Virus record (IMG/VR): IMGVR_UViG_3300036715_004471
Span: 248,001 to 312,000 of that record
Length of the DNA: 64,000 bases
Reading direction: 5' to 3' (one strand)
Shown here: positions 1 to 32,033 of the stretch, in pieces
Layout of the letters: each line of letters opens with the position of its first letter
Position numbering within the stretch: the first letter of the stretch is position 1
The notes under the pieces: generated by a model
The model's input: the letters and a program-made list of their open reading frames with translations, nothing else
Database searches by the model: none
Told to the model about the DNA's origin: nothing
Position numbers and translations under genes: made by a program

Positions 1-371
1 CATTTTTTATAAGCTTTTACTAATTCTTCTTCCGGAAAAATATCTCCATTAGAATTCTTATATGGCTTGATGCTTGGATCATTAGATGTCCAGCGCCAAG
101 TGCCACCTCTTTTATCCCAACCAACTTGTACTTGTTCTCCTCTAGCATTTAGCTTGAGAGTACCATCATCGTTGAGAGAAGATGCCTCAGCAGCATGCAT
201 CATAACAGCTGAGAAATACAAAAAGTCTTCAGCCTTAGGAGCTATCTTCTTAAGATTAGCGGCTGTTTTTCTAAAATTTTCCAATACTTCAGCACTGACT
301 GCCGGAATACAAGATTCTGTATTCTCAATTCTGCTGATTTCAATAAGTTCACCCAATTTGACAAATGGCAT
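1..371 (-). CDS. 5' part of a gene running off the left edge; probable prohead/capsid maturation protease
   Basis: Not in ORF track. My translation from ATG 371: MPFVKLGELIE...FRKTAANLKK...YKNSNGDIFPEEELVKAYKK(W), open to position 1. The NxNGDxFxxEEL motif resembles phage prohead proteases; lies in the portal/terminase module. Confidence 0.45.
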   Translation of the reverse strand, partial: MPFVKLGELIEISRIENTESCIPAVSAEVLENFRKTAANLKKIAPKAEDFLYFSAVMMHAAEASSLNDDGTLKLNARGEQVQVGWDKRGGTWRWTSNDPSIKPYKNSNGDIFPEEELVKAYKK

Positions 372-640: not shown

Positions 641-1288
641 TTAACCTACTTGTGTTCTCTCTTTTATTATTTCGTTTAGTTGATCTTGTCTTTTATTGAA
701 AAGATCTAGTATCAAAGGCGTTTTCTTCTGCACTCGCATTTGTAAATCGTCACTAACAGTATCAACCCAGCTTTTAGCCAAAATGTTGGATTGAATGTGA
801 GATTTGATTCTTTCATCAATGATCTCATCTATTTCTTCACACTGTTTTTGAATATTTTCAATTGAAGTTACTACAGTTTTGGCAAATTCTTTTGATTCCA
901 AATCATTAAAAACATCTGCAAAACTATTAACTTTTACTTCTAAATCATCAATTGAAGATATGAAAGACTTCATTAATTTTAGTGTTTGAGTATCTGAAGA
1001 AAAAACTTGCATTACATTAATACATTTGAATGCCGCAACCTTAAATTCATTAAAATTCTCAATTGATTTGTCTCTAAATCTTCTAATAGCTGCACGTGCC
1101 TTTTGAACATCATCGGGAGACATTTCTGGATTATCTTTGAATGGAGTTTTCATAATATCCAAATGATTGGATGCCATGTCTAACATTTTCAATGAATGAT
1201 TAAAACATAATAAGGCTCGTTCTGCCTGCATCTTTTCAGAATCAGAAACATCATATGTCATTTGAACAGAATAGCCCTTTTTAATCAT
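641..1288 (-). CDS. hypothetical helical protein
   Basis: Start MIKKGYS (1288) overlaps the upstream stop (ATGATTAA). Confidence 0.7.
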   Translation of the reverse strand: MIKKGYSVQMTYDVSDSEKMQAERALLCFNHSLKMLDMASNHLDIMKTPFKDNPEMSPDDVQKARAAIRRFRDKSIENFNEFKVAAFKCINVMQVFSSDTQTLKLMKSFISSIDDLEVKVNSFADVFNDLESKEFAKTVVTSIENIQKQCEEIDEIIDERIKSHIQSNILAKSWVDTVSDDLQMRVQKKTPLILDLFNKRQDQLNEIIKERTQVG

Positions 1289-2033
1289 AGAAAAACCCGC
1301 CATAATTCTCAGTTGGACCAAAACCTCTAGCACCAGCATCATTATCAAATGTTCCAACTTGAGGAATTGCGTCTTCTGAAGGATGTTCTTTTATTGGCTT
1401 ATTGGGATGGTAATTTTCTCTGGTAGGAGATTGGTCGTCAATATAATTATATACAGCGTCCATTGGATTTTGTCTAGTTTGACTTAAATATGGAGCAAAT
1501 GATCCTTGATGTCCTTCATCTAAAAAAGAGTCTCTATTATCACTCTTATATTCTCTCTCGTTCGAGACAATATCAGCTTGATTAACATCTTTAATAGGTT
1601 TGCAATTTCTAATAAGCTTTTTATAAGTATTTATTACATGTGGCGGTAACCCAACTCCAAATCCTAATGATTCTGCTTCTTGAATAGCCTTTTCAGAATC
1701 TTTACCCAAAAATTTACACTCTATAAGCGCACAAGCTAATCCCGTACGATCTTTACCATGTAAACAATGGATAAAAGTTGGACCACCTGTTAGAAATAAC
1801 TTATTAAAATCATGACTTAAAAAATCTAATAATGATTTACGAGTATAGTCTATTGGAACCATTACATGAATAATGCCGACCGCTTTACAAATACGATCTA
1901 TCTTGTCTCCCGATTCTTTATCTAGGGAAACAATCTTTTTGATACCAAATTTTTTTAGATTAGCTACATCTTGAGGAGAAGGGGCGCTGCCACGATATAA
2001 TTCATTTGTTACTTTCTTAAACCTATGAATCAT
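1281..2033 (-). CDS. protein-tyrosine/dual-specificity phosphatase family protein with C-terminal extension
   Basis: P-loop HCLHGKDRTG (CX5R); N-terminal LYRGSAP and GIKKIVSL typical of small DSP/PTP domains. Confidence 0.85.
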   Translation of the reverse strand: MIHRFKKVTNELYRGSAPSPQDVANLKKFGIKKIVSLDKESGDKIDRICKAVGIIHVMVPIDYTRKSLLDFLSHDFNKLFLTGGPTFIHCLHGKDRTGLACALIECKFLGKDSEKAIQEAESLGFGVGLPPHVINTYKKLIRNCKPIKDVNQADIVSNEREYKSDNRDSFLDEGHQGSFAPYLSQTRQNPMDAVYNYIDDQSPTRENYHPNKPIKEHPSEDAIPQVGTFDNDAGARGFGPTENYGGFFYD

Positions 2034-3166: not shown

Positions 3167-4144
3167 TTAGATAAACTTAAGTAAGAATTTTTTATGTTGA
3201 TGTTCGGCAGACTTCAAATTTATTTGACTATGTATAGATTTTTGTTCTGCAAAACATTCAGTATTAACAAGGACTTTTCCAATTTTATTAGTAGCTACTT
3301 GAAAAGCCTCGACAACCGAATTAGTCAACTGTTTCGTAACTTCTAAACATTCTATAGATGGTCCTGGAATATTACATTCTATTTCAACTTCTTGACCATC
3401 TGTATGAGTATATGCGTTTGCCATCAATTCTTCTTCTAATGCTGAGCAAAGTATTCTTGCAAACTCTACTGAATTAGTATAACTATCAGAATTGACTTTC
3501 ACTAAGATGTTATTATATGGCAACATCTTTTTGTATAATCTTTTGTTTTTTCTTTCAGAGGCAGCAACCATTTGTAAATAGCTATCCAAAATATTGGTCA
3601 ATGAATTATCATTTGCCGGAACTTTAGGAACCATAGCTATACTACTTTCTGCATTAGATTTAGAATATTGAGAATATAATTTCGTCAAACTTTTGGTGTA
3701 AGGTTCTTCGTTGGCAGTATAATATCCGGCGGCTTTTAATGCTTTTGAAAATTTTACTGGATCAGGATTTAAAATATGTTGCCAAGCTTCAGAATATTTT
3801 TTTCCACTAATGAATTTCAAATAATCTTCTGCACCCATTTGTAAAGATGGATAAGCTCTATATTTAAGATTCATCTTTTTCCAGGACCCAGGTTTAACTT
3901 GTTCTTTTGTAGTCAAATCATCAAAATAATCGTATGGTCCTTTGCTATCCGTAGTAATATTACCTACGTTGTAATTCCACATACTTTTTCTATGACCTGT
4001 TTCAAGGGCATTCTGTGCCAAAACCATAGCAACTTGTTCTTTAGAGGGAGTATCTCCAAATAGTTTTCTCCATGCCCCCGAAATGGCTTGAGCCATTTGA
4101 GAAGCCGAAATATCTGTTTTGACACGGCGAACTCTGTTTCCCAT
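3167..4144 (-). CDS. GH73/FlgJ-like glucosaminidase (peptidoglycan hydrolase) domain plus unknown C-terminal domain
   Basis: AQNALETG (catalytic Glu), NYNVGNI, YRAYPS, KALKAAGYYTA match the FlgJ/glucosaminidase pattern. Confidence 0.75.
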   Translation of the reverse strand: MGNRVRRVKTDISASQMAQAISGAWRKLFGDTPSKEQVAMVLAQNALETGHRKSMWNYNVGNITTDSKGPYDYFDDLTTKEQVKPGSWKKMNLKYRAYPSLQMGAEDYLKFISGKKYSEAWQHILNPDPVKFSKALKAAGYYTANEEPYTKSLTKLYSQYSKSNAESSIAMVPKVPANDNSLTNILDSYLQMVAASERKNKRLYKKMLPYNNILVKVNSDSYTNSVEFARILCSALEEELMANAYTHTDGQEVEIECNIPGPSIECLEVTKQLTNSVVEAFQVATNKIGKVLVNTECFAEQKSIHSQINLKSAEHQHKKFLLKFI

Positions 4145-5529: not shown

Positions 5530-7377
5530 TTATTTTGGTGGCGGTCCACTTGGAGGAGGAGGTGGTGCTGAAGGAGGCTCTCCACCCAAAGGTCCGGAAG
5601 GCATTGGTGGAGGCATTCCTCCGCCTGGAGGCGCGCCCAAATCTAATCCTGGCATTCCACCTGGAGGTGGAGCTCCCATTTGTCCTGGCACAGTTCCATC
5701 TGCACCTGGTTGTGCAGGATTTTGTGATTGAGGAATTTCATCTTCATCATCCAAAGCTCTCAAAGAATTCAGATCAAGAGTGTCCAAAGACATTTGTTCT
5801 TTCTTAGCAATAGCATTTTGAATGGCTTCTTTACGTATCTTTCTAGTTTCATCTTCAAATTCTAAACCCATAGAACGATATAAAGTGTGAACTGATGCTC
5901 TTTTTTGATCGGCAGTTCCTTGTGTCAAGGTAACTAAAGTATTTATATAATCACCAGCATCAAATAATGACATATGATTCCAATCAATCTCTGGAACAAT
6001 TAATTGTTTTTCTCCATTGGAATAATCATAAAATCCTTGAATCTTAGAGATTGGGGCAAAAATCTTTCTTTTCAACCAAGTTGACATCATATTACGAAAT
6101 TGCATGTAACGCTGTCTCAAAACATCTAATGCTACACCACCGTTTGCATACGTAGTATCAGCACCACCATCCATTAAGACTGGTGGAACTTGTAATCCAA
6201 CATATATTTCTTTGATTATTTGAGTGATATCTCCAGAAATATCATATATGCCTTGACCATATCCAACTCTTTCAACTGCCACTCCTGCATGAGTAAAGAT
6301 TTTGAAATCTTTATCATATTGAGCTTCTTCGAAAATGCTTCTCCAAGCTTCTAAATCAGCAAATGTAGGATGAAGAGCATCATTTCCTTCTCCACCAATT
6401 TTTACTAAAGTTAATGGATTGATCATGTTATCTGCTTGAGCATACTTAGATTCTCTCAATTTATCGAATAACATAAGCTGTCTAAAAATACAAACAGGAA
6501 GCCCCGTGCCCCTGATTTCATAAGGGCTGATTCTTCTGGCTAAATGAGAAACATGAAAATTATCCAAAGGAATATTTTCGCCACGCTTTACAGAATCAAT
6601 AATGTGTTGATTAAGTTGTTTACGTTGTTCAATATCAGTTGATTTATTGGAAAAAATGATTTTCTTTAAATTCTCATCAGGATGTAACATGATAATTGGT
6701 TCATTAGCCACCACAGTACGTTTTACCAACATATAATCTGGGTTTTGAATCAATAATCTACTCCACTTACCCCTGCTTTCATCCAATTCAGCATAAACAA
6801 AAGATTCTCCCAAAAGCCAATACTCTTGAGCAATCTGCACGCAAATATTCATTAAATCAATTTCCTCAATCATGTCATTGAAGAATTTCTCAATATCTTT
6901 ATTGGGACATTTAATATTCAATTTGCTAATTGGATATGTACTATGAAGGTTAATAGCATTATGTACGAATGGATTCAAAGCATAAAAACTGCGACACCAA
7001 GCATTAATAGTAGCTCTATCTCTAGGAAGATTTAAGTTGCTATTAAGCCAAAGTGGAGAATATACTTCGGGAGCCTGCTTAACAGTGTCTCCATTTCCAC
7101 CACGATAACCGCCACCACTAACAATTTGAGCATATTTTTTCATGCCCACAGAAGCGGTAACAAATGAATTATGAGTTAAGTCATTTTCTTTATTAGAAGG
7201 ACCCGAACCATCTCTGAAGAAACCTTGTTCTACCTCATCTGCTAATCCGTCTCTACGTACGCTAGAAACGCCTTGAGCCATTAGAGCACTAACTTGGGGA
7301 ACAGTTGATCTTTTTTGCATAAACTGTTCTGAATTAGATGGTCCAACCCACCGTTTTGAAGATTTATTTACAGCCAT
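5530..7377 (-). CDS. portal protein (putative) with Pro/Gly-rich C-terminal tail
   Basis: 615 aa, immediately downstream of the terminase; NPFVHNAINLH, HLARRISPYEIRGT and NPLTLVKIG segments resemble large-phage portals. Confidence 0.7.
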   Translation of the reverse strand: MAVNKSSKRWVGPSNSEQFMQKRSTVPQVSALMAQGVSSVRRDGLADEVEQGFFRDGSGPSNKENDLTHNSFVTASVGMKKYAQIVSGGGYRGGNGDTVKQAPEVYSPLWLNSNLNLPRDRATINAWCRSFYALNPFVHNAINLHSTYPISKLNIKCPNKDIEKFFNDMIEEIDLMNICVQIAQEYWLLGESFVYAELDESRGKWSRLLIQNPDYMLVKRTVVANEPIIMLHPDENLKKIIFSNKSTDIEQRKQLNQHIIDSVKRGENIPLDNFHVSHLARRISPYEIRGTGLPVCIFRQLMLFDKLRESKYAQADNMINPLTLVKIGGEGNDALHPTFADLEAWRSIFEEAQYDKDFKIFTHAGVAVERVGYGQGIYDISGDITQIIKEIYVGLQVPPVLMDGGADTTYANGGVALDVLRQRYMQFRNMMSTWLKRKIFAPISKIQGFYDYSNGEKQLIVPEIDWNHMSLFDAGDYINTLVTLTQGTADQKRASVHTLYRSMGLEFEDETRKIRKEAIQNAIAKKEQMSLDTLDLNSLRALDDEDEIPQSQNPAQPGADGTVPGQMGAPPPGGMPGLDLGAPPGGGMPPPMPSGPLGGEPPSAPPPPPSGPPPK

Positions 7378-7437: not shown

Positions 7438-9318
7438 TTAAAATCTACGTCCAATATGCCCAGTGGTAATCAGTGGCTTGTTGGCTTCTTGAAACGTTTG
7501 TTGTTGAATCATTGGATTATTATTCTTGAAACCTTTAGTTAAGATAAACTTATAAGCCAAATAAGCATTTAATAAAGCCATAAATCCATCGTTTGGAGTA
7601 CCGCCTTTTACATAATGAATACTATGATCTCCATATTTAGAAATAGAAGGACTAATTTCCATACTAGCACAATGCTCGATTAACCAAGCAATTTTTTCAT
7701 AATCTCCAAAAGGAAACTTAACGTTACCCTTTTTCATTAATTCATAAAATTCACCAATATAATGATCTCTTTCAAAAACAATCTCTTTAGGAAAAGCATC
7801 AGCAGTATATTTAACGTGACCATTGACTTTATTATGAGCACGGGAAACTAGATAACGATCTCCATAAACATTATGCAACATTGAAGAAAAATCTTGAGAG
7901 AAACCAATATCTCCAACCGCCAACTGCACACTATATTGTCTCATAATTTGGTCAATTAAACCTTTCTTACTTTCCATATCATTTCTTTTGAATTTTGTTG
8001 CAAATTCAATGGATAATAAGTTTGGTCCTTTTGCTATTAATACTACGGCTGTGCTATAAGATTGACCTGTTAATTTAACTTTTTCTGGATTTGCTAACTG
8101 CTCTAAATCTGAACGAGCACCATAATCGATCCCTAAAACAACCAATTGATCTTTACTAGGTTCTATTCTGGCTCTAAATTTTCTACCGGGCTCGCCGCAC
8201 ATTTCCCTAATTTCTTCTACTGAAATTGGAGAGGCATCACCTTGATAAAATTCTCCCAATACTTCATTTTGATACACGCGTTCAGTGTTGATAGGATGTT
8301 TGCCCGGCTTTTCATTAATCAAATCTTCTCTGGTAAACATGGGCATGTAAATCTGATTGATATGAAAACCTATCATTTGACAATCTGGATCTTGTTCTGA
8401 TTTCAAAGCAATCCACTTGCCTCTTTCAGCAGCTTCGCGCTTATCTTGTTCATGACCACAATGAACACATTTAACTATGAATCCATGTATCCATATTTTT
8501 TCCCAATCATCACTTCCAGGAGTATATAATGGAAAATGATTCTCACATTTTTCACATCCTAAATAGAAGTATTGCTGAGATGATGATTGCCACATCTTGT
8601 GAAAATCAGAGCCTTTACGACGCGGCGTTCCAAAGTATACTTGTACACCTTTAGTTGGTTTACCATACTTAGCCGTAGTTAATACCTTCAAAGAGTTACC
8701 AATAGCCATACTGGTAGTCTTCTGAACTTCATCAAAAAATAACACATCAGCCGTACGACCCATGATGCGATCTCCATCCAAACCTACAGATTCTACCCAA
8801 ATATGATTTCCATTTACAAATTGTTTGAAATGCAAAGAATCATTGGTTGCACTGGTTTGATCTAATAATGATTGCATGTATGATTTAGGTCTCGCTGCTT
8901 TTTTACTTTCTTCTGGATTAGCTGGAAGAGACGAAGAAATCATTTGATTCAATTTAGTTTTAGAATAGGCGGCAGCTAATTCTAATTGAGGAAAAGCATG
9001 AATTACTCTAATTGGCGGCTTATCACCACTTCCAAAAATACCAGAGCCCATGAAGTACATTTCTAAAGCACCTGCCATGGTTGTTCCTCCAACCTGACGT
9101 CCCTTTACCATAATAACTGGTTTGGCATTTGGCTCTAAAGCTTTTATTCCAATGTATCTATAGATATCAGAAAAAGGTTTATACCCGTTGCCACTCAGAC
9201 GAAATGGTTTTCCATCTAGAGTAAGATAGTGCTCTACAAAAGCCACGGGATCAAGCATTATAAGTTGTCTTTTTAACTTTTCAAATAGTTCTTTGTCATC
9301 AATATTTAATGTCGGCAT
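7438..9318 (-). CDS. terL: terminase large subunit (lambda GpA-like)
   Basis: Walker A region VKGRQVGGTT, Walker B LFFDEVQ, CxxC pairs CEKC/CVHC between the domains, nuclease LGIDYG. Confidence 0.9.
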   Translation of the reverse strand: MPTLNIDDKELFEKLKRQLIMLDPVAFVEHYLTLDGKPFRLSGNGYKPFSDIYRYIGIKALEPNAKPVIMVKGRQVGGTTMAGALEMYFMGSGIFGSGDKPPIRVIHAFPQLELAAAYSKTKLNQMISSSLPANPEESKKAARPKSYMQSLLDQTSATNDSLHFKQFVNGNHIWVESVGLDGDRIMGRTADVLFFDEVQKTTSMAIGNSLKVLTTAKYGKPTKGVQVYFGTPRRKGSDFHKMWQSSSQQYFYLGCEKCENHFPLYTPGSDDWEKIWIHGFIVKCVHCGHEQDKREAAERGKWIALKSEQDPDCQMIGFHINQIYMPMFTREDLINEKPGKHPINTERVYQNEVLGEFYQGDASPISVEEIREMCGEPGRKFRARIEPSKDQLVVLGIDYGARSDLEQLANPEKVKLTGQSYSTAVVLIAKGPNLLSIEFATKFKRNDMESKKGLIDQIMRQYSVQLAVGDIGFSQDFSSMLHNVYGDRYLVSRAHNKVNGHVKYTADAFPKEIVFERDHYIGEFYELMKKGNVKFPFGDYEKIAWLIEHCASMEISPSISKYGDHSIHYVKGGTPNDGFMALLNAYLAYKFILTKGFKNNNPMIQQQTFQEANKPLITTGHIGRRF

Positions 9319-9344
9319 ATCAAAATAACGTTATATGCAGGAAT

Positions 9345-10004
9345 ATGACTTCACAGAAAAATAGGGATCCAGTACAATGTATCAAATGCCACGTTATGTT
9401 AAAACTAGAAGAAAATTGGAAAGAGTATCTTAAAAAGAGGGGAAATTATATATGTGACACTTGTTTTTCGGACTATGGTAAAACATATTATCAAAAAGAT
9501 TCTGTATCAAATTCCAATAAACAATTGGCGCGCTCACGTGTTAAAAAAAGCGCTGTAATTTTCGCGTACGGTGACAAATGCGCTATTTGTCAAGAAGATG
9601 ATTATGACAAATTGACAATTGTTAATTTGAATGGTCCCAAACATAAACATGGAAATATCTATGATTGGCTGTATGATCATGTAACAAAAAAAGACAATTA
9701 TCAAGTACTATGTTACAACTGTGAAAAAAGCAAAATCTCTTATAAAGATAAGTATGCCTTGGAAAATAAGAAGATTGTAATGGAAAAATTTGGGGGATGT
9801 TGTATTGAATGTCAAGAAGATAAAATTGAAAAATTGATTCTACAAAAGACAATTGGCGGTGAGGATCACCGCCAATTACATTCTGGTTCAAATCTATATA
9901 GATGGTTAATTAAAAATCATTATCCGATTGAATTACAGGTTGTTTGTTTTAATTGTTATTTTAGTAAGCTCAATAGGAAAGTATTAGATCTTGACCGGAT
10001 TTAA
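9345..10004 (+). CDS. degenerate tandem HNH-like (His-Me finger) endonuclease, opposite strand
   Basis: Two copies of (Y/F)GxxCxxC...LYxWL...QVxC(Y/F)NC; start 9345 has AGGA upstream; canonical DH lost in both copies. Confidence 0.6.
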   Translation: MTSQKNRDPVQCIKCHVMLKLEENWKEYLKKRGNYICDTCFSDYGKTYYQKDSVSNSNKQLARSRVKKSAVIFAYGDKCAICQEDDYDKLTIVNLNGPKHKHGNIYDWLYDHVTKKDNYQVLCYNCEKSKISYKDKYALENKKIVMEKFGGCCIECQEDKIEKLILQKTIGGEDHRQLHSGSNLYRWLIKNHYPIELQVVCFNCYFSKLNRKVLDLDRI

Positions 10005-11604: not shown

Positions 11605-11997
11605 TTAAATCCACATTTCATTATAAAATGTGTTTCCAGAATCTGTCTCACCATATTGTGGTTGTTCGGGACTTGGACTATCCAAATCTTCTTGTGGAGA
11701 AATACCATCAGGTAAACCATAAAGAGATGGTTCGGCAGGACTTAAATACTTTTTTATTAAAGCATCAATATCAACAGGCTCATCTTCCACATAATCTCTT
11801 CCAAAATCTAATGTGCTTGGGTCTTTTCCTTCAAAATCATTTTCTAGCAAATATTCATCTAGATTCCCGCCAATTTGGGCGCCATCACTATATGAACCAC
11901 TTTCCCAATTGATAAAACTATCTCCTACTTGTTCATCTACCGGAAAATCAATAGCAGTTTTGACAATTGAATTTATGACCTCTGCTCTTACTCTCAT
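11605..11997 (-). CDS. hypothetical acidic protein
   Basis: 130-aa ORF in operon. Confidence 0.65.
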   Translation of the reverse strand: MRVRAEVINSIVKTAIDFPVDEQVGDSFINWESGSYSDGAQIGGNLDEYLLENDFEGKDPSTLDFGRDYVEDEPVDIDALIKKYLSPAEPSLYGLPDGISPQEDLDSPSPEQPQYGETDSGNTFYNEMWI

Positions 11998-12000
11998 GTT

Positions 12001-12324
12001 TTAAGAACGTTGCTTTCTATTTGAGTCATTATCTTCAATCCAAAAATCATCTGCTTTATATTTGTCCTGCATATGTTTACGTTTAGCATCTCTGAATTCT
12101 TTAATGCTTTTATATTTATGCATGTGATGCCATCCAGCACCAGGACCTAATTTAGGTTTTCCATCTACACCTTCAACATCATATAAATCAAAATTTCTGT
12201 AGAAAGGTTCTTTGAAACGAGGTTGAACTAAAATAGCCTTTTCTGCCTTATACTTTTTCTTTTTAGGGGTTGGCTCATTGCCGCCTCCGCCCCCTTGAAA
12301 ATATGCTGTTTTATTTTGAGACAC
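12001..12324 (-). CDS. hypothetical basic protein
   Basis: GTG start after AAGGTGG, overlapping the upstream stop. Confidence 0.65.
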   Translation of the reverse strand: MSQNKTAYFQGGGGGNEPTPKKKKYKAEKAILVQPRFKEPFYRNFDLYDVEGVDGKPKLGPGAGWHHMHKYKSIKEFRDAKRKHMQDKYKADDFWIEDNDSNRKQRS

Positions 12325-13084
12325 TTATTCCACCTTTAACATGTTTGTTATAATATGGATACATAATCTCAGTAATAGGAACATAATTCCATATATTCAT
12401 TTTAGTCAAATTATAACTAGCACGGTCGGCATCTCTTTTGAAAGCCTCGTTCAATTTATCATTCAATGATTTTTCGGTAGCAATTCTAACTGAATTTGGA
12501 TTCTTTTTAACGAAATCTACTATTGACTGATCAATATCAAAACCCAATTTAGAAGCCAAATACACTGCTCTAATAACTCTGTTCTTATTTGAAGTTAATG
12601 TTATCTGTGGACTCAGACAAGTTTTAATTTTCTTTTCTTTGATATCCTTAAATCCGGCACGTGTCGGATCAATAATATTTTTTAAATCCAAAGATAACAG
12701 TAAAGCATTACAAGTAAAATCTCGACTAAACATTTCTTTTTGCATTTCTGTTGGATTTGCAATACCTTGTTTATTCAAAATAACTTCAATGCCGGGCGCA
12801 TTGAAGTTTGAAGAAAAATCTATTTTCAAGTTTCCCACATGGATAGTGCTATGACCATCTTCCATGGTTTTCCTATTAATGTTGTATCTTTTCTTAAATT
12901 CTTCTGCAAACCGTTGTGATAACAAATCTACAGATTTATCTCCAGTAGTAACATCTAAATCAGAAATATTATCTAGTCTTTTTAAGTACTTATCTCTGGG
13001 CGTACCTCCGCAAATATAAGGCTCGGAAGCCTTAATCTCTTGTTGGACCGCTTTCATAGTAGAAAGTAACTCACGTAATTTCAT
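12311..13084 (-). CDS. class II tRNA nucleotidyltransferase / poly(A) polymerase family protein (short, atypical template motif)
   Basis: GGTPRD...DLD (D42/D44), third carboxylate D89, SRDFTCNA, NRVIRA...KLGF. EDxxR position reads SNKNR. Confidence 0.85.
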   Translation of the reverse strand: MKLRELLSTMKAVQQEIKASEPYICGGTPRDKYLKRLDNISDLDVTTGDKSVDLLSQRFAEEFKKRYNINRKTMEDGHSTIHVGNLKIDFSSNFNAPGIEVILNKQGIANPTEMQKEMFSRDFTCNALLLSLDLKNIIDPTRAGFKDIKEKKIKTCLSPQITLTSNKNRVIRAVYLASKLGFDIDQSIVDFVKKNPNSVRIATEKSLNDKLNEAFKRDADRASYNLTKMNIWNYVPITEIMYPYYNKHVKGGISVSK

Positions 13085-13086
13085 AA

Positions 13087-14913
13087 TTATCTAGCTGGTG
13101 CGGCTGTAGGTTTAGCTGGTTGAGGTGCTTCCGGTGGAGCAGGGGGCTTACTTAAATCTTCTTCGATATCAACTTCTGGAGTCTCTTTTGCCGGCTGCAT
13201 AGATTCTGCTAATTCACGATCAGCTTGCTCTGCTCTCATCTTTTTCTTAGTCTTATCCTTCTGTTCTTGCATTTCTAATTTTTGCCTAAATGCTTCATCT
13301 TCTGGAGATGTGCTTTTATTATCGCCTCTCAAATCTAAATCTTTTCCTTCTATTCCACCTTCCAATTTAGATAAAATATCATCTAAACGTGTAGCAATAT
13401 AGTTGTTTGATTCCAATGCTTTGTTAATAGCTTCTGATAAAGAAGGGAAGTATGCCGCCCAACCTTTACTATCTAACATCATATCAATGATTGAAAGTTG
13501 TCTTGGAATTTCTCTAGTTTTATAGACTTTGGCAATGTCTTTCAATTTGCTAATAATATCATTAACTGTTACATTAGCAAAAGCCGAATCAATGATTCTA
13601 TCAAAATCTCTTGATTCTGGTGAAGAACCTGCATCTACTTCGGCTACATTATCAGTAGAAGGTTTTAGTGTTTTTGATGGTTTTGGTGGAACCACTGGTG
13701 CGACTGGAGGTTTAGCCGGCATTTTAGATGCAGGTGGCGGAGGAACTTCTTGCGCTTCTGTAACCAATACCTCATCTTCAATATCATTAACATCTAAACT
13801 ATCGCTAACTTCTAAGATATCATCTTCTGATGCATGTTCATCATCTTTTTCACCTGGATCAAGATTCTTCAAAAATAAATCAATGCCTTTTGGTGTTGAT
13901 TCATTTGGTGCGCTTTCTGGAGGTGTTTGAGGCATTCCCGGACCAATAGATGGCAATCCTCCAGGAGCGCCAGTATTTTGTGTTGGAGGCGCTGGAGAAA
14001 CAGGAGTTATAGGCGCACCCACATCATTAGTTCCAGTTCCCGGAGGTGGCGGGTTATTGGCTTGAGAAATTGAAAATAGCAAATTAGCGGCTTTAACAAA
14101 ACCCTTCTTATTCATGATATTAGCCTCACGAATAATCATATCTTCATACAATTTAGTAGAGATACTAATCTTATTTACCATTTGAATTTTCTTTTTCAAT
14201 TGATAAATAATTTCCAATAGAGACTCAAATTCTTTTCCTGCAAAAATTTGTCCCTCATGTGTTCTTAATAATTTTTCTGCCGAATCTAATCTTCCAACAA
14301 TCTTATTTCTTTGCTTCTCTATAATACGTTTCTTTTCGGAAGCAGGAAGCTCGTCGGCAATAGAATCACGAGCCATATCAATGTCTTGTCCTTGGACAGA
14401 AGGCGTCTGTTCTTTTTGAGGATCTTGTTTGATATGCAAAAAATAACCTGGAGAACCATTTTCATACCATAATTGAGCCGTTTTGTATTTCAAATGAGTG
14501 TTTCCTTCGTAAAATTTCAACCAATTAAGAAAATCATAAGTTTCCATTGGATTCCAACCATTAGTGGCTTGTCTAATAGCGGCTATACGATTGGCACCAT
14601 TTCTTTCCTTATAATAAACTTCTCTAACTGTTTGTAACCATTTTGCAGTATCACGCGCTCCCGGAATATGAGAATATTGTTCATTATTTGGATAAGCTTT
14701 CTTATCTCCAACAATATCTCCTCTGCCTGTACCGTCTAAAAACTCTGAATCAAATCCACCATATGGATTTTTTATTTTTCCAAAGAAGTCCAATAGTTTT
14801 TGGATCTTAGCTTCCATTTCTGGTGTATAAACCTGATCTTGCTCCTCTGGAGCTACCCAAGTTTTATCTACCATTTTTGACCAAGGCATATCTGGTTTTA
14901 CTTTAATAGTCAT
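13087..14913 (-). CDS. large hypothetical protein with Pro-rich and acidic linkers
   Basis: 608-aa ORF in head module. Confidence 0.75.
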   Translation of the reverse strand: MTIKVKPDMPWSKMVDKTWVAPEEQDQVYTPEMEAKIQKLLDFFGKIKNPYGGFDSEFLDGTGRGDIVGDKKAYPNNEQYSHIPGARDTAKWLQTVREVYYKERNGANRIAAIRQATNGWNPMETYDFLNWLKFYEGNTHLKYKTAQLWYENGSPGYFLHIKQDPQKEQTPSVQGQDIDMARDSIADELPASEKKRIIEKQRNKIVGRLDSAEKLLRTHEGQIFAGKEFESLLEIIYQLKKKIQMVNKISISTKLYEDMIIREANIMNKKGFVKAANLLFSISQANNPPPPGTGTNDVGAPITPVSPAPPTQNTGAPGGLPSIGPGMPQTPPESAPNESTPKGIDLFLKNLDPGEKDDEHASEDDILEVSDSLDVNDIEDEVLVTEAQEVPPPPASKMPAKPPVAPVVPPKPSKTLKPSTDNVAEVDAGSSPESRDFDRIIDSAFANVTVNDIISKLKDIAKVYKTREIPRQLSIIDMMLDSKGWAAYFPSLSEAINKALESNNYIATRLDDILSKLEGGIEGKDLDLRGDNKSTSPEDEAFRQKLEMQEQKDKTKKKMRAEQADRELAESMQPAKETPEVDIEEDLSKPPAPPEAPQPAKPTAAPAR

Positions 14914-15829: not shown

Positions 15830-16732
15830 TCATTTCTCATTTTTATTTTTCCAATCTGATTCCCAAATAGATACTAAATTATACCCGGCATTTTTTATCA
15901 TTTTCTCTCTTACCATAGTATCTTTATACAGATCACCACATCTTTTATTATTTTTGTGATTCATTGTTTCTGCATCGTAAATTTTCGGATTTCCGTGAAA
16001 ATAATCGCCATAAAATTCATAAATGGTATTGGTTTGTGGGTCAAAACCATCTGGTTTTATATACGAATCATTCATATAAATTCTACAATGTCTATGTATA
16101 TTATCATTAGATATACCCAAACTATCCAACCATTCCATTTCTGGTTTAGATGAATTGCTTGAACAGGTGGGGCATCCAACACCATTCAAATATGAATCCG
16201 GACATTGCCAAAAAGAACCATGCTTGCGGCATGATATTTCAATGTCAGTTCTGGCGTTTAAATATTCTCCTGGATAAGTGTATTTATCATTATGAATAGC
16301 ATTTGCTTCTTTAACAAATTGTAATTTTGTTTTCTTAACAGTGCCGGCGCATTTTGGACATCCATTTCCTTGTAGATGCTTATCAGGTGTTTGTAAAAAC
16401 ATGTCATGAATTTTACAATGTATTTTGATTTTGATTTTGGATCCCTTATAATCTTCCAAATATATATACTTGTTATTATGAATAATATTAGCTTTTTTTA
16501 TGAAATCTTCACTTGATTTTCTGAACAAATTCTTTCTGTATTCTATAGCACAATTAGGGCACCCACATCCTTGTAAATGACTACTTGGAATTTGTTCAAA
16601 AATTCCATGAATTGGACATTCAATACCTATTTTAATAGAATCACCGCAATAAGTATAAGGATATTTATACTTATTGCGGTGAATTTTATTAGCTTGTTCG
16701 ACAAATTGTAAATTTGTTTTCTTTAAACACAT
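15830..16732 (-). CDS. free-standing homing-type endonuclease: three Cys/His zinc-binding repeats plus C-terminal Vsr/PD-(D/E)XK-like domain
   Basis: Three repeats F..AN.IH..KY.Y...C..H..F.Q.P...L.G.GCP.C; C-terminal DGFD...IYEFYGDYFHGNP...SIWESDW. Paralog at 36856-37773. Confidence 0.75.
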   Translation of the reverse strand: MCLKKTNLQFVEQANKIHRNKYKYPYTYCGDSIKIGIECPIHGIFEQIPSSHLQGCGCPNCAIEYRKNLFRKSSEDFIKKANIIHNNKYIYLEDYKGSKIKIKIHCKIHDMFLQTPDKHLQGNGCPKCAGTVKKTKLQFVKEANAIHNDKYTYPGEYLNARTDIEISCRKHGSFWQCPDSYLNGVGCPTCSSNSSKPEMEWLDSLGISNDNIHRHCRIYMNDSYIKPDGFDPQTNTIYEFYGDYFHGNPKIYDAETMNHKNNKRCGDLYKDTMVREKMIKNAGYNLVSIWESDWKNKNEK

Positions 16733-18472: not shown

Positions 18473-20080
18473 TTACCCAAAAATCTTGTAGTTGTTAAAT
18501 GTAACAGCTTCGTAACCTTCTTCCATACCTTTCCTATATAGAGGTCTGCAATTACCTTCTTTATCAATGTAAGTCTTATGAACCGGTAGTCCAGTGTGTG
18601 AACAAATTGGATGTTCACTGGAAGCACTTTTAATCATTTTGTTGCAAGTTGGTTCGGCAGAAGCGTTAGCGACCTTGCCTGATAATCCTTGAACAAAAGC
18701 TTGGAATCCAAAGGCATATGCTTTTGCATCTCTAGAATTTGCTAATACATTCAAAGCATCTTCAGCACCTTCATGATTTCCTTCACTTAGTGCTTTCTTA
18801 ATATTAGTAATTAATTCACTTGGTTTAAGATTATACACAGGTGAGGCGGAGGCAGCAGCTTTGAAGTCAGAATGGTTACTCTTAACTAGAGTGTTTATGG
18901 TTTCTTCGCTGAAAGAACCAACAGTTCCATTACATAGCATTACAGATGGTGAAGAGATCTTACCATTTGCAACCTTAATTGGCACAGTAAATCCTACACG
19001 ACCATTATTTAATGCAACGCTCAAATAAATTGCGCCCGGCTCTGATCCTGATACTGTAATTTGCGGATTTTTATATCCAAATCCAAGAATTTCACGAGCA
19101 ACACATTCGCGAGCTAATTTTACAACTTGTTCTCCAAATTGTAACATTGCCGTACCTTGTGGCGAAGCAAATTTCTCTTCAAATGATTGGAATTCATCAG
19201 ATTTTGGTAGTTCAACATCTTTTACAGATGCTTCTGCCATCTTTTGACCAACAATCTGATTGTGAAAGAATTCTGACTTTCCCTGTCTAGTAGCATTAAG
19301 TTTAGTCAATGCTAATTCAGCCGCACTAATTTCTCTATTTTCAGTAGATGCTTGAGTTAGTAAACTCAAGATAGATGTTCCGCTAGCTTTTAATTTGCTA
19401 CCAGCATTAGTGGTAACATACTTTTTAACATTAGTATGATCCAAATCTTGTGGACCAGTATTACCCATAAAAACAGATGCTTCTGAAAGTTTTCCGCGAT
19501 GAATTTCTACTGGAACATAAAATCCAGTAACACCTTTTGGAGTTTCGTATTCTGCTCTAATCATTAAAAACTTATCATTACCATCTTCCATTACTAATGA
19601 AGATGGTCTCAAGTTCCAAGAATCTAAAGTAGAAGCAACGGTTTTTATAGCTTGATTAGCCAAACTTTGATTATACATCTTAACAGGGGAACCATCAAAA
19701 ACACTATTTAAAGCATTTGATAAAATTTGATCTCCTACCTGATAAGGGTTAAGCATGGCAGCATCATCTCTTTCATAAGTCTTGATATTAGGCTCATTAT
19801 CAATGATACCTAACTCATCTTGAAAAAGCTCAGCCACTTTGTTATTACGTGAATACAATTTATTGTATAGTGATTTGAAATCAGCCTTTTTAATAAAAAG
19901 TGTGTTATTGGATGCCATTTTTTCGATTACTCTAGACATGGATCCCAAAGTCTGATCTTGGGGGTAGAGGTTCACGTACTTAGCCAATTTAGCCGCAAGA
20001 ATTGGTGTAGCCAATTTTTCATTGTCGTCTATTGATTTAGCTAGTGAACTTACTAATTGCTGAATTTTTTCGAGACTCAT
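18473..20080 (-). CDS. large hypothetical protein with C-terminal Cys/His motif
   Basis: 535 aa; CNK...CSHTGLPVH...CRP. Confidence 0.75.
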   Translation of the reverse strand: MSLEKIQQLVSSLAKSIDDNEKLATPILAAKLAKYVNLYPQDQTLGSMSRVIEKMASNNTLFIKKADFKSLYNKLYSRNNKVAELFQDELGIIDNEPNIKTYERDDAAMLNPYQVGDQILSNALNSVFDGSPVKMYNQSLANQAIKTVASTLDSWNLRPSSLVMEDGNDKFLMIRAEYETPKGVTGFYVPVEIHRGKLSEASVFMGNTGPQDLDHTNVKKYVTTNAGSKLKASGTSILSLLTQASTENREISAAELALTKLNATRQGKSEFFHNQIVGQKMAEASVKDVELPKSDEFQSFEEKFASPQGTAMLQFGEQVVKLARECVAREILGFGYKNPQITVSGSEPGAIYLSVALNNGRVGFTVPIKVANGKISSPSVMLCNGTVGSFSEETINTLVKSNHSDFKAAASASPVYNLKPSELITNIKKALSEGNHEGAEDALNVLANSRDAKAYAFGFQAFVQGLSGKVANASAEPTCNKMIKSASSEHPICSHTGLPVHKTYIDKEGNCRPLYRKGMEEGYEAVTFNNYKIFG

Positions 20081-23264: not shown

Positions 23265-24272
23265 TTAATCCTTATCTAAATGATCTATGTCACTTGGATC
23301 GTAAGTTTGATGACCATTCAACACATTGATTAACCTAGATATTATCTCTACATCTTCTGGATAAGTAACATCTATTATTACTTTTTGAGATCCTACACCA
23401 TTAACACCTAGGTTAGGTATCTTTATTTCATCTTTGTTTCTAGAACAAGGGGGAATTATTAATTCTTTTTCTCCCATAATGGTTTTTACTTGAACATTAA
23501 TACCCTGTAACGCATCTAGAAAAGATAGATTTAAGTGTGAAACAACATCTTGTCCTTCCAACGATAATCCTTCTTCTGGAATAACTGTTAAATGAAGGTG
23601 TGCTTCTGAATATTGATCCATGCCCATAAAGCTATTAACATAATGTCCAAAACCATTCAGCCTCAAAATGTTTCCTGACACTACGCCAGGTGGCACATTG
23701 ACACTTCCAGAAACCTGAGTACTAATAGTACCTTTCGATGAACAAGTGCGACATTGATTAATAGGGATTCTTCCAAAACATTTATCACATGTCCTGGTAA
23801 ACATCATGTTTCCCTGTTTACCAATAATTTGCCCTTTTCCTCCACACTTATCACATCCATTATTAGATTGTATCTGTCCTTGACCATTACAATCTGCACA
23901 CTTACCATTTCTGGTAAAAGAAATTTCCTTTTGACAACCCAAAATAGATTCTTTGAATGATAAGGTGATTTGAAGTACAATATGTTCTATTTGTGTCTGC
24001 TGTCTTCCTCCAAAAGGATTTATATTGATTCCAGGAAATCCTTGAAATGGATTAAACCCAGATTCTTGTATCACTGGCTCAGGATCGGTGCCTTTTCCAT
24101 TAACAACACACCGATAAGCTTCATTAATCTTTTTGAATTTATTTTCAGCACCATCTTCTTTATTAACATCAGGATGATACTTTTTAGTAAGTTCTCTATA
24201 TTTCTTTTTAGCATCTTCCGGAGAAGTTTCCGGAGATAATTCTAATATTGAATATGCTTCTTGCAAATTCAT
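23265..24272 (-). CDS. dnaJ: DnaJ chaperone (type I)
   Basis: J-domain KYHPD, G/F stretch, four CxxCxGxG-type repeats, C-terminal domain. Confidence 0.92.
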   Translation of the reverse strand: MNLQEAYSILELSPETSPEDAKKKYRELTKKYHPDVNKEDGAENKFKKINEAYRCVVNGKGTDPEPVIQESGFNPFQGFPGININPFGGRQQTQIEHIVLQITLSFKESILGCQKEISFTRNGKCADCNGQGQIQSNNGCDKCGGKGQIIGKQGNMMFTRTCDKCFGRIPINQCRTCSSKGTISTQVSGSVNVPPGVVSGNILRLNGFGHYVNSFMGMDQYSEAHLHLTVIPEEGLSLEGQDVVSHLNLSFLDALQGINVQVKTIMGEKELIIPPCSRNKDEIKIPNLGVNGVGSQKVIIDVTYPEDVEIISRLINVLNGHQTYDPSDIDHLDKD

Positions 24273-27106: not shown

Positions 27107-27427
27107 TTATTTTTGCTTAAATACCAGGCTGCGCATGTACGAGATTTTGTGCCACGGTACCAATACCTCCAATATTAAGTCTTTGGGGGTGGAAGTCAAG
27201 ATGTCGACAAAGTTTTTTATTATCTCGTCCTCCGTCGAATCAGAAAAAATTCCTTTAACCTGCACAAAACCCTGTAAAAGCTCCGGTTTATCCAGAGTAA
27301 TGAATTTTTTTACATTCTTATTCTTAGAAGAATCATCCATAATAATCAAATAGGACGGCTTCTTAGCTATGGCAACTGTACCCATTAATCCAGTTACTTG
27401 TATTGCAATATCACTAGGTCCTGACAT
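27107..27427 (-). CDS. hypothetical protein
   Basis: TAATG-coupled to recA. Confidence 0.65.
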   Translation of the reverse strand: MSGPSDIAIQVTGLMGTVAIAKKPSYLIIMDDSSKNKNVKKFITLDKPELLQGFVQVKGIFSDSTEDEIIKNFVDILTSTPKDLILEVLVPWHKISYMRSLVFKQK

Positions 27428-32025: not shown

Positions 32026-32033
32026 ATATATCA
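32026..32033 (-). promoter_or_regulatory. TGATATAT putative extended -10 element overlapping the dnaE stop
   Basis: Recurring boundary octamer. Confidence 0.4.

What the first reader, a model, noticed from the sequence alone, without database searches (positions are those of the whole stretch)
12311..13084. CCA-enzyme-like nucleotidyltransferase with a rewritten template motif (SNxxR for EDxxR), coupled into the head operon
Seen: catalytic D42/D44/D89 and RDF are intact, but the EDxxR position reads S165-N-K-N-R169, RFA reads YLA, and the protein is only 257 aa with a truncated tRNA-binding body/tail. It starts 2 nt after one head-module gene and overlaps the next. Known: in class II CCA enzymes the EDxxR residues hydrogen-bond the CTP/ATP Watson-Crick edge, and altering them changes NTP specificity; several toxin and defence systems attack tRNA 3' ends. 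Inference: a phage nucleotidyltransferase adding a non-CCA tail or acting on a non-tRNA substrate, possibly delivered in the virion.
Basis: partly seen in the sequence, partly recalled or inferred. Interest (0 to 1): 0.75.

Follow-up and report, generated by a model that had tools for sequence, protein, structure and literature searches.

The report
Minimal phage RNA-tailing enzyme, altered pocket
A giant uncultured phage carries a stripped-down relative of the enzyme that builds the CCA end of tRNAs, with its nucleotide-choosing residues changed and tied to a partner protein that shares a motif with the head-maturation protease; it is a new variant of a known enzyme family, and what it adds, and to which RNA, is still unknown.

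Summary
Window 12311-13084 (-) encodes a 257-aa class II (PolyA_pol/CCA-type) nucleotidyltransferase. Its catalytic residues are intact. S165-N-K-N-R169 stands where EDxxR should be, and most of the body and the whole tail are missing.

It is not a private variant. About 730 homologs of about 250 aa exist, on contigs of up to 477 kb. The gene holds a fixed place upstream of the large terminase and portal genes.

Basal clades of this short family keep xDxxR. The window's clade (99% support) changed four active-site positions together: V25C, I125C, D166N and R/K168N. The key arginine (R169) and all catalytic residues stay fixed, so this is remodelling, not decay.

The downstream gene overlaps the enzyme gene by 14 nt and is fused in frame to it in at least 12 relatives. 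Its N-terminal 29-residue module occurs in only one other protein of the genome, a 1206-aa protein with a head-maturation-protease domain.

Most likely reading: an active RNA 3'-end transferase that adds one kind of nucleotide and is made with, and possibly packaged into, the head. A changed NTP specificity is plausible but unproven; published mutant data point both ways. This is a new variant of a known kind, of moderate interest.

The parts
12311..13084 (-). 257-aa class II nucleotidyltransferase: head, neck and the first body helix only
   Evidence: Pfam PF01743 E 8e-14; model pLDDT 95; Z about 20 to PDB 4wby, 3h3a and 1miv.
12953..13009 (-). Motif A: G26-G-T-P-R-D31 ... D42-L-D44 (catalytic carboxylates). 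C25, just before it, is one of the clade-specific changes (V in canonical short forms).
   Evidence: G26, G27, R30, D42 and D44 are invariant in 84 diverse homologs.
12818..12820 (-). D89, the third catalytic carboxylate, in the invariant K-x-D-F-S-S-N motif
12707..12727 (-). Motif B: S120-R-D-F-T-C-N126. Canonical enzymes read RRDFTIN; the first Arg is Ser in the whole short family, and I125C is specific to this clade.
12557..12592 (-). Motif D region: S165-N-K-N-R169-V-I-R172-A-V-Y-L176, in place of EDxxRxxRxxRF
   Evidence: D166N and R/K168N change together; R169 is conserved in more than 90% of homologs.
12001..12324 (-). Partner gene, basic N-terminal part (107 aa). It overlaps the enzyme ORF by 14 nt and carries the AYFQGGGG-NEPTP-KKKYK module. 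It ends at a TAA (12001-12003) that is AAA or GAA in close relatives.
11605..11997 (-). Partner gene, acidic C-terminal part (130 aa), in frame with the part above. The two parts form one ORF in relatives.
13087..14913 (-). Conserved 608-aa proline-rich, low-complexity protein of unknown function. It ends 2 nt before the enzyme's ATG.
7438..9318 (-). Terminase large subunit (GpA-type)
   Evidence: phrog_675 E 1e-57.
5530..7377 (-). Portal protein
   Evidence: phrog_16240 E 2e-52.
1..371 (-). The first 123 codons of a 1206-aa protein (genome 244751-248371). Its residues 106-214 match a head-maturation protease. It carries two copies of the partner's N-terminal module at residues 385-408 and 476-504; those residues lie outside the window.

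Best explanation
The gene encodes an active, minimal class II RNA 3'-terminal nucleotidyltransferase. It is a core gene, at a fixed position, in a lineage of huge phages (roughly 330-480 kb) known only from metagenomes.

Shown:
- The fold and the catalytic residues are intact.
- The tail and most of the body, the domains that anchor tRNA in canonical enzymes, are absent.
- Orthologs share synteny down to 38% identity.
- One large subclade has a derived, co-ordinated change of four active-site positions.
- The gene is under purifying selection.
- It is translationally coupled, or fused in frame, to the downstream protein.
- That protein shares a specific module with the head-maturation-protease protein.

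Inferred:
- The first template position varies across the whole short family, as in CC-adding enzymes, which need no C-to-A switch. The enzyme therefore probably adds one kind of nucleotide rather than building full CCA.
- With R169 kept and Asn still able to accept an amino-group hydrogen bond, A or C remains the most likely substrate. Relaxed or shifted specificity is possible.
- Substrate binding or localisation is probably supplied by the basic/acidic partner rather than by a body and tail.
- The shared module is probably a head-assembly targeting or protease-processing signal. It lies exactly at the enzyme-partner junction in the fused forms. The enzyme would then be made with, and possibly packed into, the head, and would act on RNA 3' ends (tRNA acceptor ends most likely) early in the next infection or late in this one.
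For: Family and fold.

Active, not decaying:
- G26, G27, R30, D42, D44 and D89 are invariant, and R121, D122 and R169 nearly invariant, in 84 diverse homologs.
- A 98%-identical strain differs by 6 synonymous changes and 1 conservative change.

Core gene: about 730 homologs in the word-indexed search, and 198 representative clusters below E 1e-10. The same gene order holds in L002-L005, including an ortholog with DDPRR.

Derived remodelling:
- The tree puts the query in a clade of 33 representatives with 99% support. Most of them read xNxNR, while basal clades read xDxxR.
- D..K/R-R and N..N-R are paired states.
- The only positions that separate the two groups are residues 25, 125, 166 and 168, plus one inserted residue.

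[quoted passage not shown] Position 1 in this family is S, T, A, N, Y, D and others.

Arg is the main determinant of specificity: PMC2532741.

Partner:
- The same 14-nt ATG...TAA overlap occurs in 14 or more loci.
- In-frame fusions occur in 12 loci from different samples.
- The partner family has about 280 members.

Head link:
- An HMM of the partner's N-terminus hits only the partner itself and the 1206-aa protein among 4144 ORFs of the genome, and it hits that protein's homologs in five relatives (sequences).
- Residues 106-214 of that protein match phrog_18299, head maturation protease, at E 2.6e-14.
- In the canonical clade the enzyme is fused to Peptidase_M15_3 and Phage_lysozyme2 domains (P0212, P0236).

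RNA-end repair flavour: one relative is fused to HAD_SAK domains of 'Swiss Army Knife' RNA-repair proteins (P0256).
Against: - No activity, substrate or localisation data exist, and no RNA run was listed.
- The complex prediction for enzyme plus partner gave no verdict, and the partner is predicted to be largely disordered.
- The immediate neighbours have no recognisable function.
- The protease assignment rests on one PHROG match; Pfam and PDB sequence searches found nothing.
- The shared module could be a common linker or binding motif unrelated to packaging.
- D165 could not be replaced in the human-enzyme selection. An Asn enzyme may therefore not use A or C as assumed.
- The genome's RNA-repair genes (RtcB, RNA ligases) lie far from this gene.
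- Relatives with 0-4 tRNA genes keep the enzyme, so phage tRNAs are not its necessary substrate.
Confidence: 0.5

Rival explanations
1. It is an ordinary tRNA CCA-adding or CCA-repair enzyme in a compact format. SNxxR is a tolerated neutral variant, and the enzyme maintains the 3' ends of host and phage tRNAs as proposed for other jumbo-phage CCA enzymes.
For: - The best sequence and fold matches are all tRNA nucleotidyltransferases.
- The literature treats jumbo-phage homologs as CCA repair enzymes (PMC7824862; PMC7162821).
- R169 is conserved.
- CCA enzymes have a back-up selection mechanism through the RNA primer.
- The genome has 56 tRNA genes and RNA-repair genes.
Against: [quoted passage not shown]
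- The tail and most of the body, which hold the tRNA acceptor and T arms, are missing.
- Scores are far below every NCBIfam equivalog cut-off.
- 48 of the 56 tRNA genes already encode CCA.
- Relatives with 0-4 tRNA genes keep the gene.
- The share of phage tRNA genes that encode CCA does not track the motif state cleanly.
Confidence: 0.2
2. This is the first reader's reading: the remodelled pocket confers a new NTP specificity (U, G or promiscuous). The enzyme then tails tRNAs or other RNAs with a non-CCA sequence, for example to block, mark or protect RNA ends in the conflict with the host.
For: - Four co-ordinated active-site changes occur under purifying selection.
- Rational mutation of the templating Asp and Arg changes the nucleotide added (Cho et al. 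2007, as cited in PMC3925840, and PMC2532741).
- Asn offers a hydrogen-bond donor that Asp lacks (chemistry, my inference).
- Several members of the clade tolerate insertions in the template loop.
Against: - Arg, a hydrogen-bond donor that suits N3 of C and N1 of A, is kept. According, the published switch to G needed replacement of the template positions by residues that bond with GTP.
- PAP D212A kept A-specificity.
- There is no direct evidence for any product.
- There is no similarity to known tRNA-tailing toxins or to defence proteins.
Confidence: 0.2
3. The protein is an inactive remnant or a purely structural domain, and the template change reflects loss of function.
For: - The motif D Asp is lost.
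- The template loop is variable, with insertions in some relatives.
- The protein is truncated.
Against: - All catalytic and NTP-binding residues are invariant across representatives down to 23-30% identity.
- The strain comparison shows a 6:1 ratio of synonymous to non-synonymous changes.
- The model is confidently folded.
- The gene is kept in every genome of the lineage that was examined.
Confidence: 0.05

Closest known systems
[quoted passage not shown]
   Same: - The head and neck fold (Z 18.7-20.2).
- GGxxRD, the DxD...D catalytic triad, the RD of motif B, the templating Arg and the following RxxR/helix.
   Different: - Most of the body and the whole tail are missing: about 257 aa against about 370-440.
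- The template reads S-N-x-N-R instead of E/D-D-x-x-R.
- The first Arg of motif B is Ser.
- Cys stands at positions 25 and 125.
- RF(A) reads YL(A).
- Scores are far below the equivalog cut-offs.
Class II CC-adding enzymes (e.g. A. aeolicus AaS, PDB 3WFO-3WFS)
   Same: The first template position is variable, which is consistent with adding a single nucleotide type without a specificity switch (PMC11784652). The head and neck fold is shared (Z about 17).
   Different: CC-adding enzymes keep the templating Asp (Asp182 in AaS) and have body and tail domains with two tRNA sites. This protein has neither.
Bacterial poly(A) polymerase I (PcnB; PDB 3AQK-3AQN)
   Same: The head and neck fold is shared (Z 14-15). 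PAP I shows that a class II core can act on RNAs other than tRNA.
   Different: PAP I keeps EDxxR and has a C-terminal RNA-binding region. The TIGR01942 score is 38 bits against a cut-off of 305.65.
Annotated tRNA nucleotidyltransferases of cultured and metagenomic large phages (Aeromonas phage 65, Rhodococcus phage NiceHouse, Lak phages; phrog_2244 and phrog_24229)
   Same: They belong to the same Pfam family and are phage-encoded. They are generally read as tRNA 3'-end repair enzymes.
   Different: Identity is only 21-30%. This family is a separate, deep clade of about 250-aa proteins, fixed beside the packaging genes and coupled or fused to a lineage-specific partner.
T4-type head-internal proteins with short N-terminal capsid-targeting leaders removed by the prohead protease (Alt, IPI-III). 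This is an analogy from general knowledge and was not tested here.
   Same: A short conserved N-terminal stretch (10 residues up to YFQ, then GGGG) on the partner recurs inside the protease-bearing head protein. The proteins concerned are enzymatic or disordered and are encoded among head genes.
   Different: There is no sequence relationship. Neither cleavage nor packaging has been shown. In the fused forms the enzyme lies upstream of the putative site.

Membership tests
Class II (PolyA_pol, PF01743) nucleotidyltransferase superfamily | Match to the head-domain profile above the curated cut-off | tested here: met
   52.5 bits against a cut-off of 23, E 8e-14, residues 23-153.
Class II (PolyA_pol, PF01743) nucleotidyltransferase superfamily | Catalytic carboxylates DxD...D/E with the GGxxRD loop | tested here: met
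   G26-G27, R30-D31, D42, D44 and D89 are present and invariant in homologs.
Class II (PolyA_pol, PF01743) nucleotidyltransferase superfamily | Head plus helical neck fold | tested here: met
   Model pLDDT 95. Foldseek E 2.5e-12 and VIA-align Z 20.2 to PDB 4wby.
Class II CCA-adding enzyme | Motif D template E/D-D-x-x-R | tested here: not met
   S165-N166-K-N-R169. Asp is absent in all 120 of the closest homologs. [quoted passage not shown]
Class II CCA-adding enzyme | [quoted passage not shown] | tested here: not met
   Model residues 1-253 align to residues about 1-272 of 4wby, 17-294 of 3h3a and 3-260 of 1miv; nothing lies beyond. Domain roles are taken from PMC3925840.
Class II CCA-adding enzyme | Score above the NCBIfam equivalog cut-off (NF009814, TIGR02692) | tested here: not met
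   57.7 bits against 290, and 48.9 against 438.8.
Class II CCA-adding enzyme | Ordered synthesis of C-C-A on tRNA | not testable with these tools
   This needs an enzyme assay.
A-adding enzyme | EDxxR or DDxxR template, and a score above the equivalog cut-off (NF041569) | tested here: not met
   The template is SNKNR. The score is 24.3 bits against 1440.
CC-adding enzyme | Variable first template position with a conserved templating Asp and Arg | tested here: not met
   The first position is variable and Arg is kept, but Asp is replaced by Asn.
CC-adding enzyme | Absence of the flexible loop between motifs A and B | tested here: inconclusive
   Thirty residues lie between D89 and S120, including two short helices. 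No residue-level comparison with known loops was possible.
Poly(A) polymerase I (PcnB) | Score above the TIGR01942/NF008634 cut-offs, and the C-terminal RNA-binding region | tested here: not met
   38.2 bits against 305.65, and 18.2 against 702. There is no PolyA_pol_RNAbd match.
Nucleotidyltransferase toxins and defence nucleotidyltransferases (MenT/AbiEii and other PADLOC families) | Match to any defence-system profile | tested here: not met
   No PADLOC match at E up to 0.01.
Virion (head-internal) protein | Detected in purified particles, or processed by the prohead protease | not testable with these tools
   Only indirect evidence exists: the module shared with the protease-domain protein, the gene's position, and lysin-domain fusions in relatives.

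The most novel reading that the evidence does not exclude
The enzyme is packed into the capsid through its partner's head-targeting or protease-processing module and is delivered with the DNA. Its remodelled N-x-N-R pocket adds a nucleotide other than the canonical C/A pattern to host RNA 3' ends. It would thus be an injected RNA-tailing enzyme that repairs, caps or disables tRNA acceptor ends at the very start of infection.
Probability: 0.12. Interest if true: 0.85.

Novelty: new variant of a known kind. Interest (0 to 1): 0.55.

Why it matters
Class II nucleotidyltransferases are the textbook case of a protein side-chain 'template' (EDxxR) choosing nucleotides without a nucleic-acid template. 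Here nature supplies a large family under purifying selection in which the templating Asp is replaced, together with three neighbouring active-site positions. Orthologs in the same genomic slot keep the canonical motif. That gives ready-made pairs for asking what each residue contributes.

The family also lacks the domains that measure and hold tRNA, and it is instead fused or coupled to a lineage-specific partner. This raises the question of how substrate choice is achieved.

If the link to the head-maturation-protease protein reflects packaging, this would be an RNA-end-modifying enzyme carried in a phage head. That bears on how huge phages deal with host attacks on the translation apparatus.

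Tried and rejected
- **Complex prediction** of the enzyme with the 107-aa partner part: no verdict, score 0.00, partner pLDDT about 50. This is not evidence either way.
- **Language-model atlas searches** for the 608-aa and 313-aa neighbours: no usable hit. For the C-terminal part of the 1206-aa protein they gave only sub-threshold leads to protease and scaffold families.
- **Pfam, PHROG and NCBIfam scans** of the eleven genes between the sigma-like factor and the terminase: nothing except the enzyme and two homing endonucleases.
- **Fold of the conserved 535-aa neighbour**: middling model (pLDDT 68). The only match is a weak one to the repeat domains of RnlA (E 7e-4, TM 0.11-0.14). No capsid fold was seen.
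- **Idea that motif decay follows genomic encoding of CCA in phage tRNA genes.** It looked good at first: 14% and 37% of tRNA genes encode CCA in two D-type phages, against 81-86% in two N-type phages. It failed with more genomes: N-type G009 25%, G010 56%, and the EQKKR-type G013 10%. Rejected as a clean correlation.
- **Idea that the partner is a split-off body and tail**: rejected. The partner is predicted to be disordered, has no Pfam match, and shows no similarity to the C-terminal domains of class II enzymes.
- **Programmed +1 frameshift at the overlap**: not needed. Relatives have an ATG and a ribosome-binding site in the overlap.
- **TAG recoding** (two CUA suppressor tRNAs): coding density under table 11 is already 0.90-0.99 in the phage part, and the in-frame stop in the partner is TAA, not TAG.
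- **RNA-seq**: none was listed.
- **Close relatives among GenBank phages**: none by DNA. The best terminase match is 24% identical.
Full report
**1. The observation**

Window 12311-13084 on the minus strand is an ORF of 257 codons.

The protein matches the Pfam poly(A) polymerase head domain well above its cut-off (52.5 bits against 23, E 8e-14). It also matches two PHROG families annotated as tRNA nucleotidyltransferase. HMMER alignments to solved structures place SNKNR on the EDPvR of the Aquifex aeolicus A-adding enzyme and of S. pombe cca2, and RAVYLASKLGF on RALRFAGRLNF.

An AlphaFold model built on 84 homologs is very confident (mean pLDDT 95, pTM 0.90). It superposes on class II A-adding, CCA-adding and CC-adding enzymes and on E. 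coli poly(A) polymerase: Foldseek E 2.5e-12 and VIA-align Z 14-20. The whole model covers only about the first 260-290 residues of enzymes that are about 370-440 residues long. It therefore consists of head, neck and one further helix, and most of the body and the whole tail are absent.

The upstream gene ends 2 nt before the ATG. The downstream gene starts at a GTG 14 nt inside the ORF, in the +1 frame, behind AAAGGTGG.

The one loose point is 'head-module gene': the adjacent genes have no recognisable function.

**2. The genome it sits in**

The window is positions 248001-312000 of a 446.5-kb virus record. Nearly all genes run on the minus strand.

In transcription order the region reads as follows.
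- Replication and regulation genes: a DnaE-type Pol III alpha, RecA, a RuvC-like protein, DnaJ, a primase and a sigma-like factor.
- A block of eleven genes, of which only the enzyme and one homing endonuclease get a family name. A second homing endonuclease lies on the opposite strand just before the terminase gene.
- Packaging and head genes: terminase large subunit (7438-9318), portal (5530-7377), a 444-aa protein and a glucosaminidase-domain protein.
- About 12 kb downstream of the enzyme, a 1206-aa protein whose residues 106-214 match a head-maturation protease (phrog_18299, E 2.6e-14).

No cultured phage is close. There is no DNA match, and the best terminase match is 24% identical. Near-identical DNA occurs in microbial-mat, sediment and aquatic metagenomes.

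The genome has one PolyA_pol gene and 56 tRNA genes, 48 of which already encode CCA. It also has an RtcB gene and three RNA-ligase-family genes, all far from this locus. Some of these lie in a 20-130 kb segment with 46-59% GC that may not be phage DNA.

**3. A large, deep family, not a private variant**

A word-indexed search found 729 homologs. The best 120 are 65-100% identical, almost all are 242-260 aa long, and they lie on contigs of up to 477 kb. An exhaustive search of 50%-identity representatives found 198 clusters below E 1e-10.

Gene order around the enzyme is conserved in every long contig examined. This includes an ortholog only 38% identical (P0196 on a 414-kb contig): RecA, primase, sigma-like factor, five to six unknowns, the enzyme, an overlapping downstream gene, two to three unknowns, terminase and portal. 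The enzyme is thus a core gene of this huge-phage lineage, at a fixed position.

It is kept even in relatives with no detectable tRNA gene (394 kb, 92% complete) or with only four (472 kb). So it does not exist merely to serve phage tRNAs.

**4. What happened to the template motif**

In the 120 closest homologs the motif reads [S/T/A]-N-[R/K]-N-R. N166 is present in 114 of 120 (S in 6), and N168 and R169 in all 120.

Across the 50%-identity representatives, the basal clades of the same short family carry the canonical Asp (DDPRR, NDPKR, YDPKR). The query lies in a clade of 33 representatives with 99% local support. In most of these Asp is Asn; a few have S, M, Q or D, and some have insertions in the loop.

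In 80 IMG/VR loci the two states are paired: D..K/R-R or N..N-R.

A scan for positions conserved within, but different between, the canonical and derived groups returned residues 25 (V to C), 125 (I to C), 166 (D to N) and 168 (R/K to N). All four lie in motifs A, B and D. The scan also returned one inserted residue.

The catalytic and triphosphate-binding residues are invariant throughout. A 98%-identical strain in an independent run differs in this gene by six synonymous changes and one conservative change. This pattern is co-ordinated remodelling of an active pocket under selection, not decay.

**5. What the change means for specificity**

The literature points both ways.
- In structures, the templating Asp accepts a hydrogen bond from the 4-NH2 of CTP or the 6-NH2 of ATP. 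The Arg bonds N3 and O2 of C, or N1 of A (PMC3925840).
- In a randomised-library in vivo selection on the human enzyme, whose library included N and S, the Asp and Arg were never replaced. [quoted passage not shown]
- In E. coli poly(A) polymerase, by contrast, E211A and D212A keep more than 90% AMP incorporation, and only R215A loses specificity. CCA enzymes also have a primer-based back-up (PMC2532741).

In the window's protein the Arg is conserved. Asn can still accept an amino-group hydrogen bond, and it adds a donor; this is my inference from chemistry.

My reading is this. The variable first position across the whole short family argues for an enzyme that adds one kind of nucleotide, with no C-to-A switch. 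A or C remains the most likely nucleotide. A shifted or relaxed specificity cannot be excluded and would need an assay.

The protein fails the defining features of every curated class II subtype.
- Template: none of them has SNxxR.
- Domains: the tail and most of the body are missing.
- Curated cut-offs: 57.7 bits against 290 for CCA-adding, 24 against 1440 for A-adding and 38 against 306 for PcnB.
- Defence-system profiles: no match.

**6. The partner**

The downstream gene is the most informative neighbour. In the window it is two in-frame ORFs: 107 aa and basic, then 130 aa and acidic. They are separated by a TAA at 12001-12003. The closest relative has AAA there, and a 98%-identical strain has GAA. 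In about 280 relatives the gene is a single ORF of 215-440 aa.

In at least 14 loci its ATG overlaps the enzyme's stop in the same 14-nt arrangement. In 12 loci from different samples it is fused in frame to the enzyme, giving proteins of 447-783 aa. Further relatives carry a 50-80-aa C-terminal extension with the partner's NYDY...GPGxG...KYKSVxDF-basic motif. Such repeated fusion argues that the two act together.

The partner has no family match and is predicted to be largely disordered, so it is not a detached body and tail.

In the canonical clade the gene in the same position is a different protein, and it is likewise sometimes fused to the enzyme. In two representative clusters that fusion carries a Peptidase_M15_3 domain, in one of them also a phage tail lysozyme domain, and in another cluster a HAD domain of 'Swiss Army Knife' RNA-repair proteins.

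**7. The link to head maturation**

The partner begins M-x-x-N-K-x-A-Y-F-Q-G-G-G-G-x-N-E-P-T-P-x-K-K-K-Y-K. An HMM of this stretch was searched against all 4144 stop-to-stop ORFs of the genome. It finds only the partner itself (E 9e-28) and the 1206-aa protease-domain protein, which has two tandem copies at residues 385-408 and 476-504 (E 2e-6).

The same protein in five related genomes matches twice each (E 4e-18 to 8e-8). Some stretches are nearly identical to the partner consensus, for example SKEAYFQGGGGVNEPTPGKVKY.

In fused enzyme-partner proteins the module lies exactly at the junction. The simplest reading is a shared head-assembly signal, either a protease processing site or a targeting or binding motif. 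This is an inference. It places the partner, and with it the enzyme, in the prohead pathway. The protease assignment itself rests on one PHROG match.

**8. Verdict**

The pocket is really and systematically altered and the tRNA-holding domains are gone. A non-CCA product is not shown. The virion idea has new indirect support.
- The object is a new variant of a known kind: a minimal, partner-dependent class II nucleotidyltransferase with a remodelled template, core to an uncultured huge-phage lineage.
- Interest is moderate (0.55). It offers a natural experiment on protein-templated nucleotide choice and a testable candidate for a head-packaged RNA-end enzyme.

Noticed in passing
window 12001-12003 (-), within 11605-12324: An in-frame TAA splits the partner gene into parts of 107 aa and 130 aa. 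The closest relative (L010) has AAA there and a 98%-identical strain (run X2) has GAA. About 280 relatives have one uninterrupted ORF. The TAA is present in the contig of the probable source run X1.
   Followed up: yes
genome 15230-15303 and 320811-320884 (outside the window); stop codons genome-wide: There are two tRNA genes with the CUA anticodon (amber suppressors). TAG is almost never used as a stop in the 33-37% GC phage part: none among ORFs called between 140 and 320 kb. Coding density under table 11 is already 0.90-0.99, so nothing shows TAG recoding in the phage's own genes.
   Followed up: partly
genome 20-130 kb (outside the window): A segment of about 110 kb has 46-59% GC, mixed gene strands and lower coding density, against 33-37% GC elsewhere. 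IMG/VR labels the record a provirus. The segment may be a host flank or an assembly chimera. One tRNA gene straddles its 20-kb edge and three more lie inside it, as do two of the RNA-ligase hits.
   Followed up: partly
window 9309-10004 (+) and 15830-16732 (-): Two homing-endonuclease-like ORFs (HNH; phrog_681/559 with treble-clef repeats) interrupt the conserved gene block. They are absent at these places in related loci L002 and L005, which carry a GIY-YIG gene elsewhere instead.
   Followed up: partly
window 1-371 (-) and genome 244751-248371: A 1206-aa protein has an N-terminal head-maturation-protease match, two tandem 'AYFQGGGG-NEPTPG-KY' modules and a long C-terminal part of unknown fold. 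It could be a protease-scaffold polyprotein. Whether the modules are self-cleavage sites is untested.
   Followed up: partly
window 18473-20080 (-): A conserved 535-aa protein (about 60-94% identity in at least 120 relatives) has two similar alpha/beta repeat modules. Its only fold match is a weak one to the N-terminal repeat domains of the RnlA endoribonuclease (E 7e-4, TM 0.11-0.14). No capsid fold was seen.
   Followed up: partly
window 1281-2033 (-): A 250-aa protein of the tyrosine/dual-specificity phosphatase families (Y_phosphatase2/3, Tc-R-P) lies downstream of the portal and lysin genes.
   Followed up: no
window 3167-4144 (-): A glucosaminidase-domain protein (PF01832; PHROG endolysin) lies two genes after the portal, among presumed head or virion genes.
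   Followed up: no
related records G012 (L052) and G005 (L055): These near-complete relatives, of 394 kb and 472 kb, have no tRNA gene and four tRNA genes respectively. Others of the lineage have 15-56. The share of phage tRNA genes that encode CCA ranges from 10% to 86% between genomes.
   Followed up: partly
window 23265-24272 (-), 27427-28623 (-), 32031-35546 (-): The phage encodes a full DnaJ (J domain, zinc-finger centre and C-terminal domain), a RecA and a DnaE-type Pol III alpha subunit.
   Followed up: no
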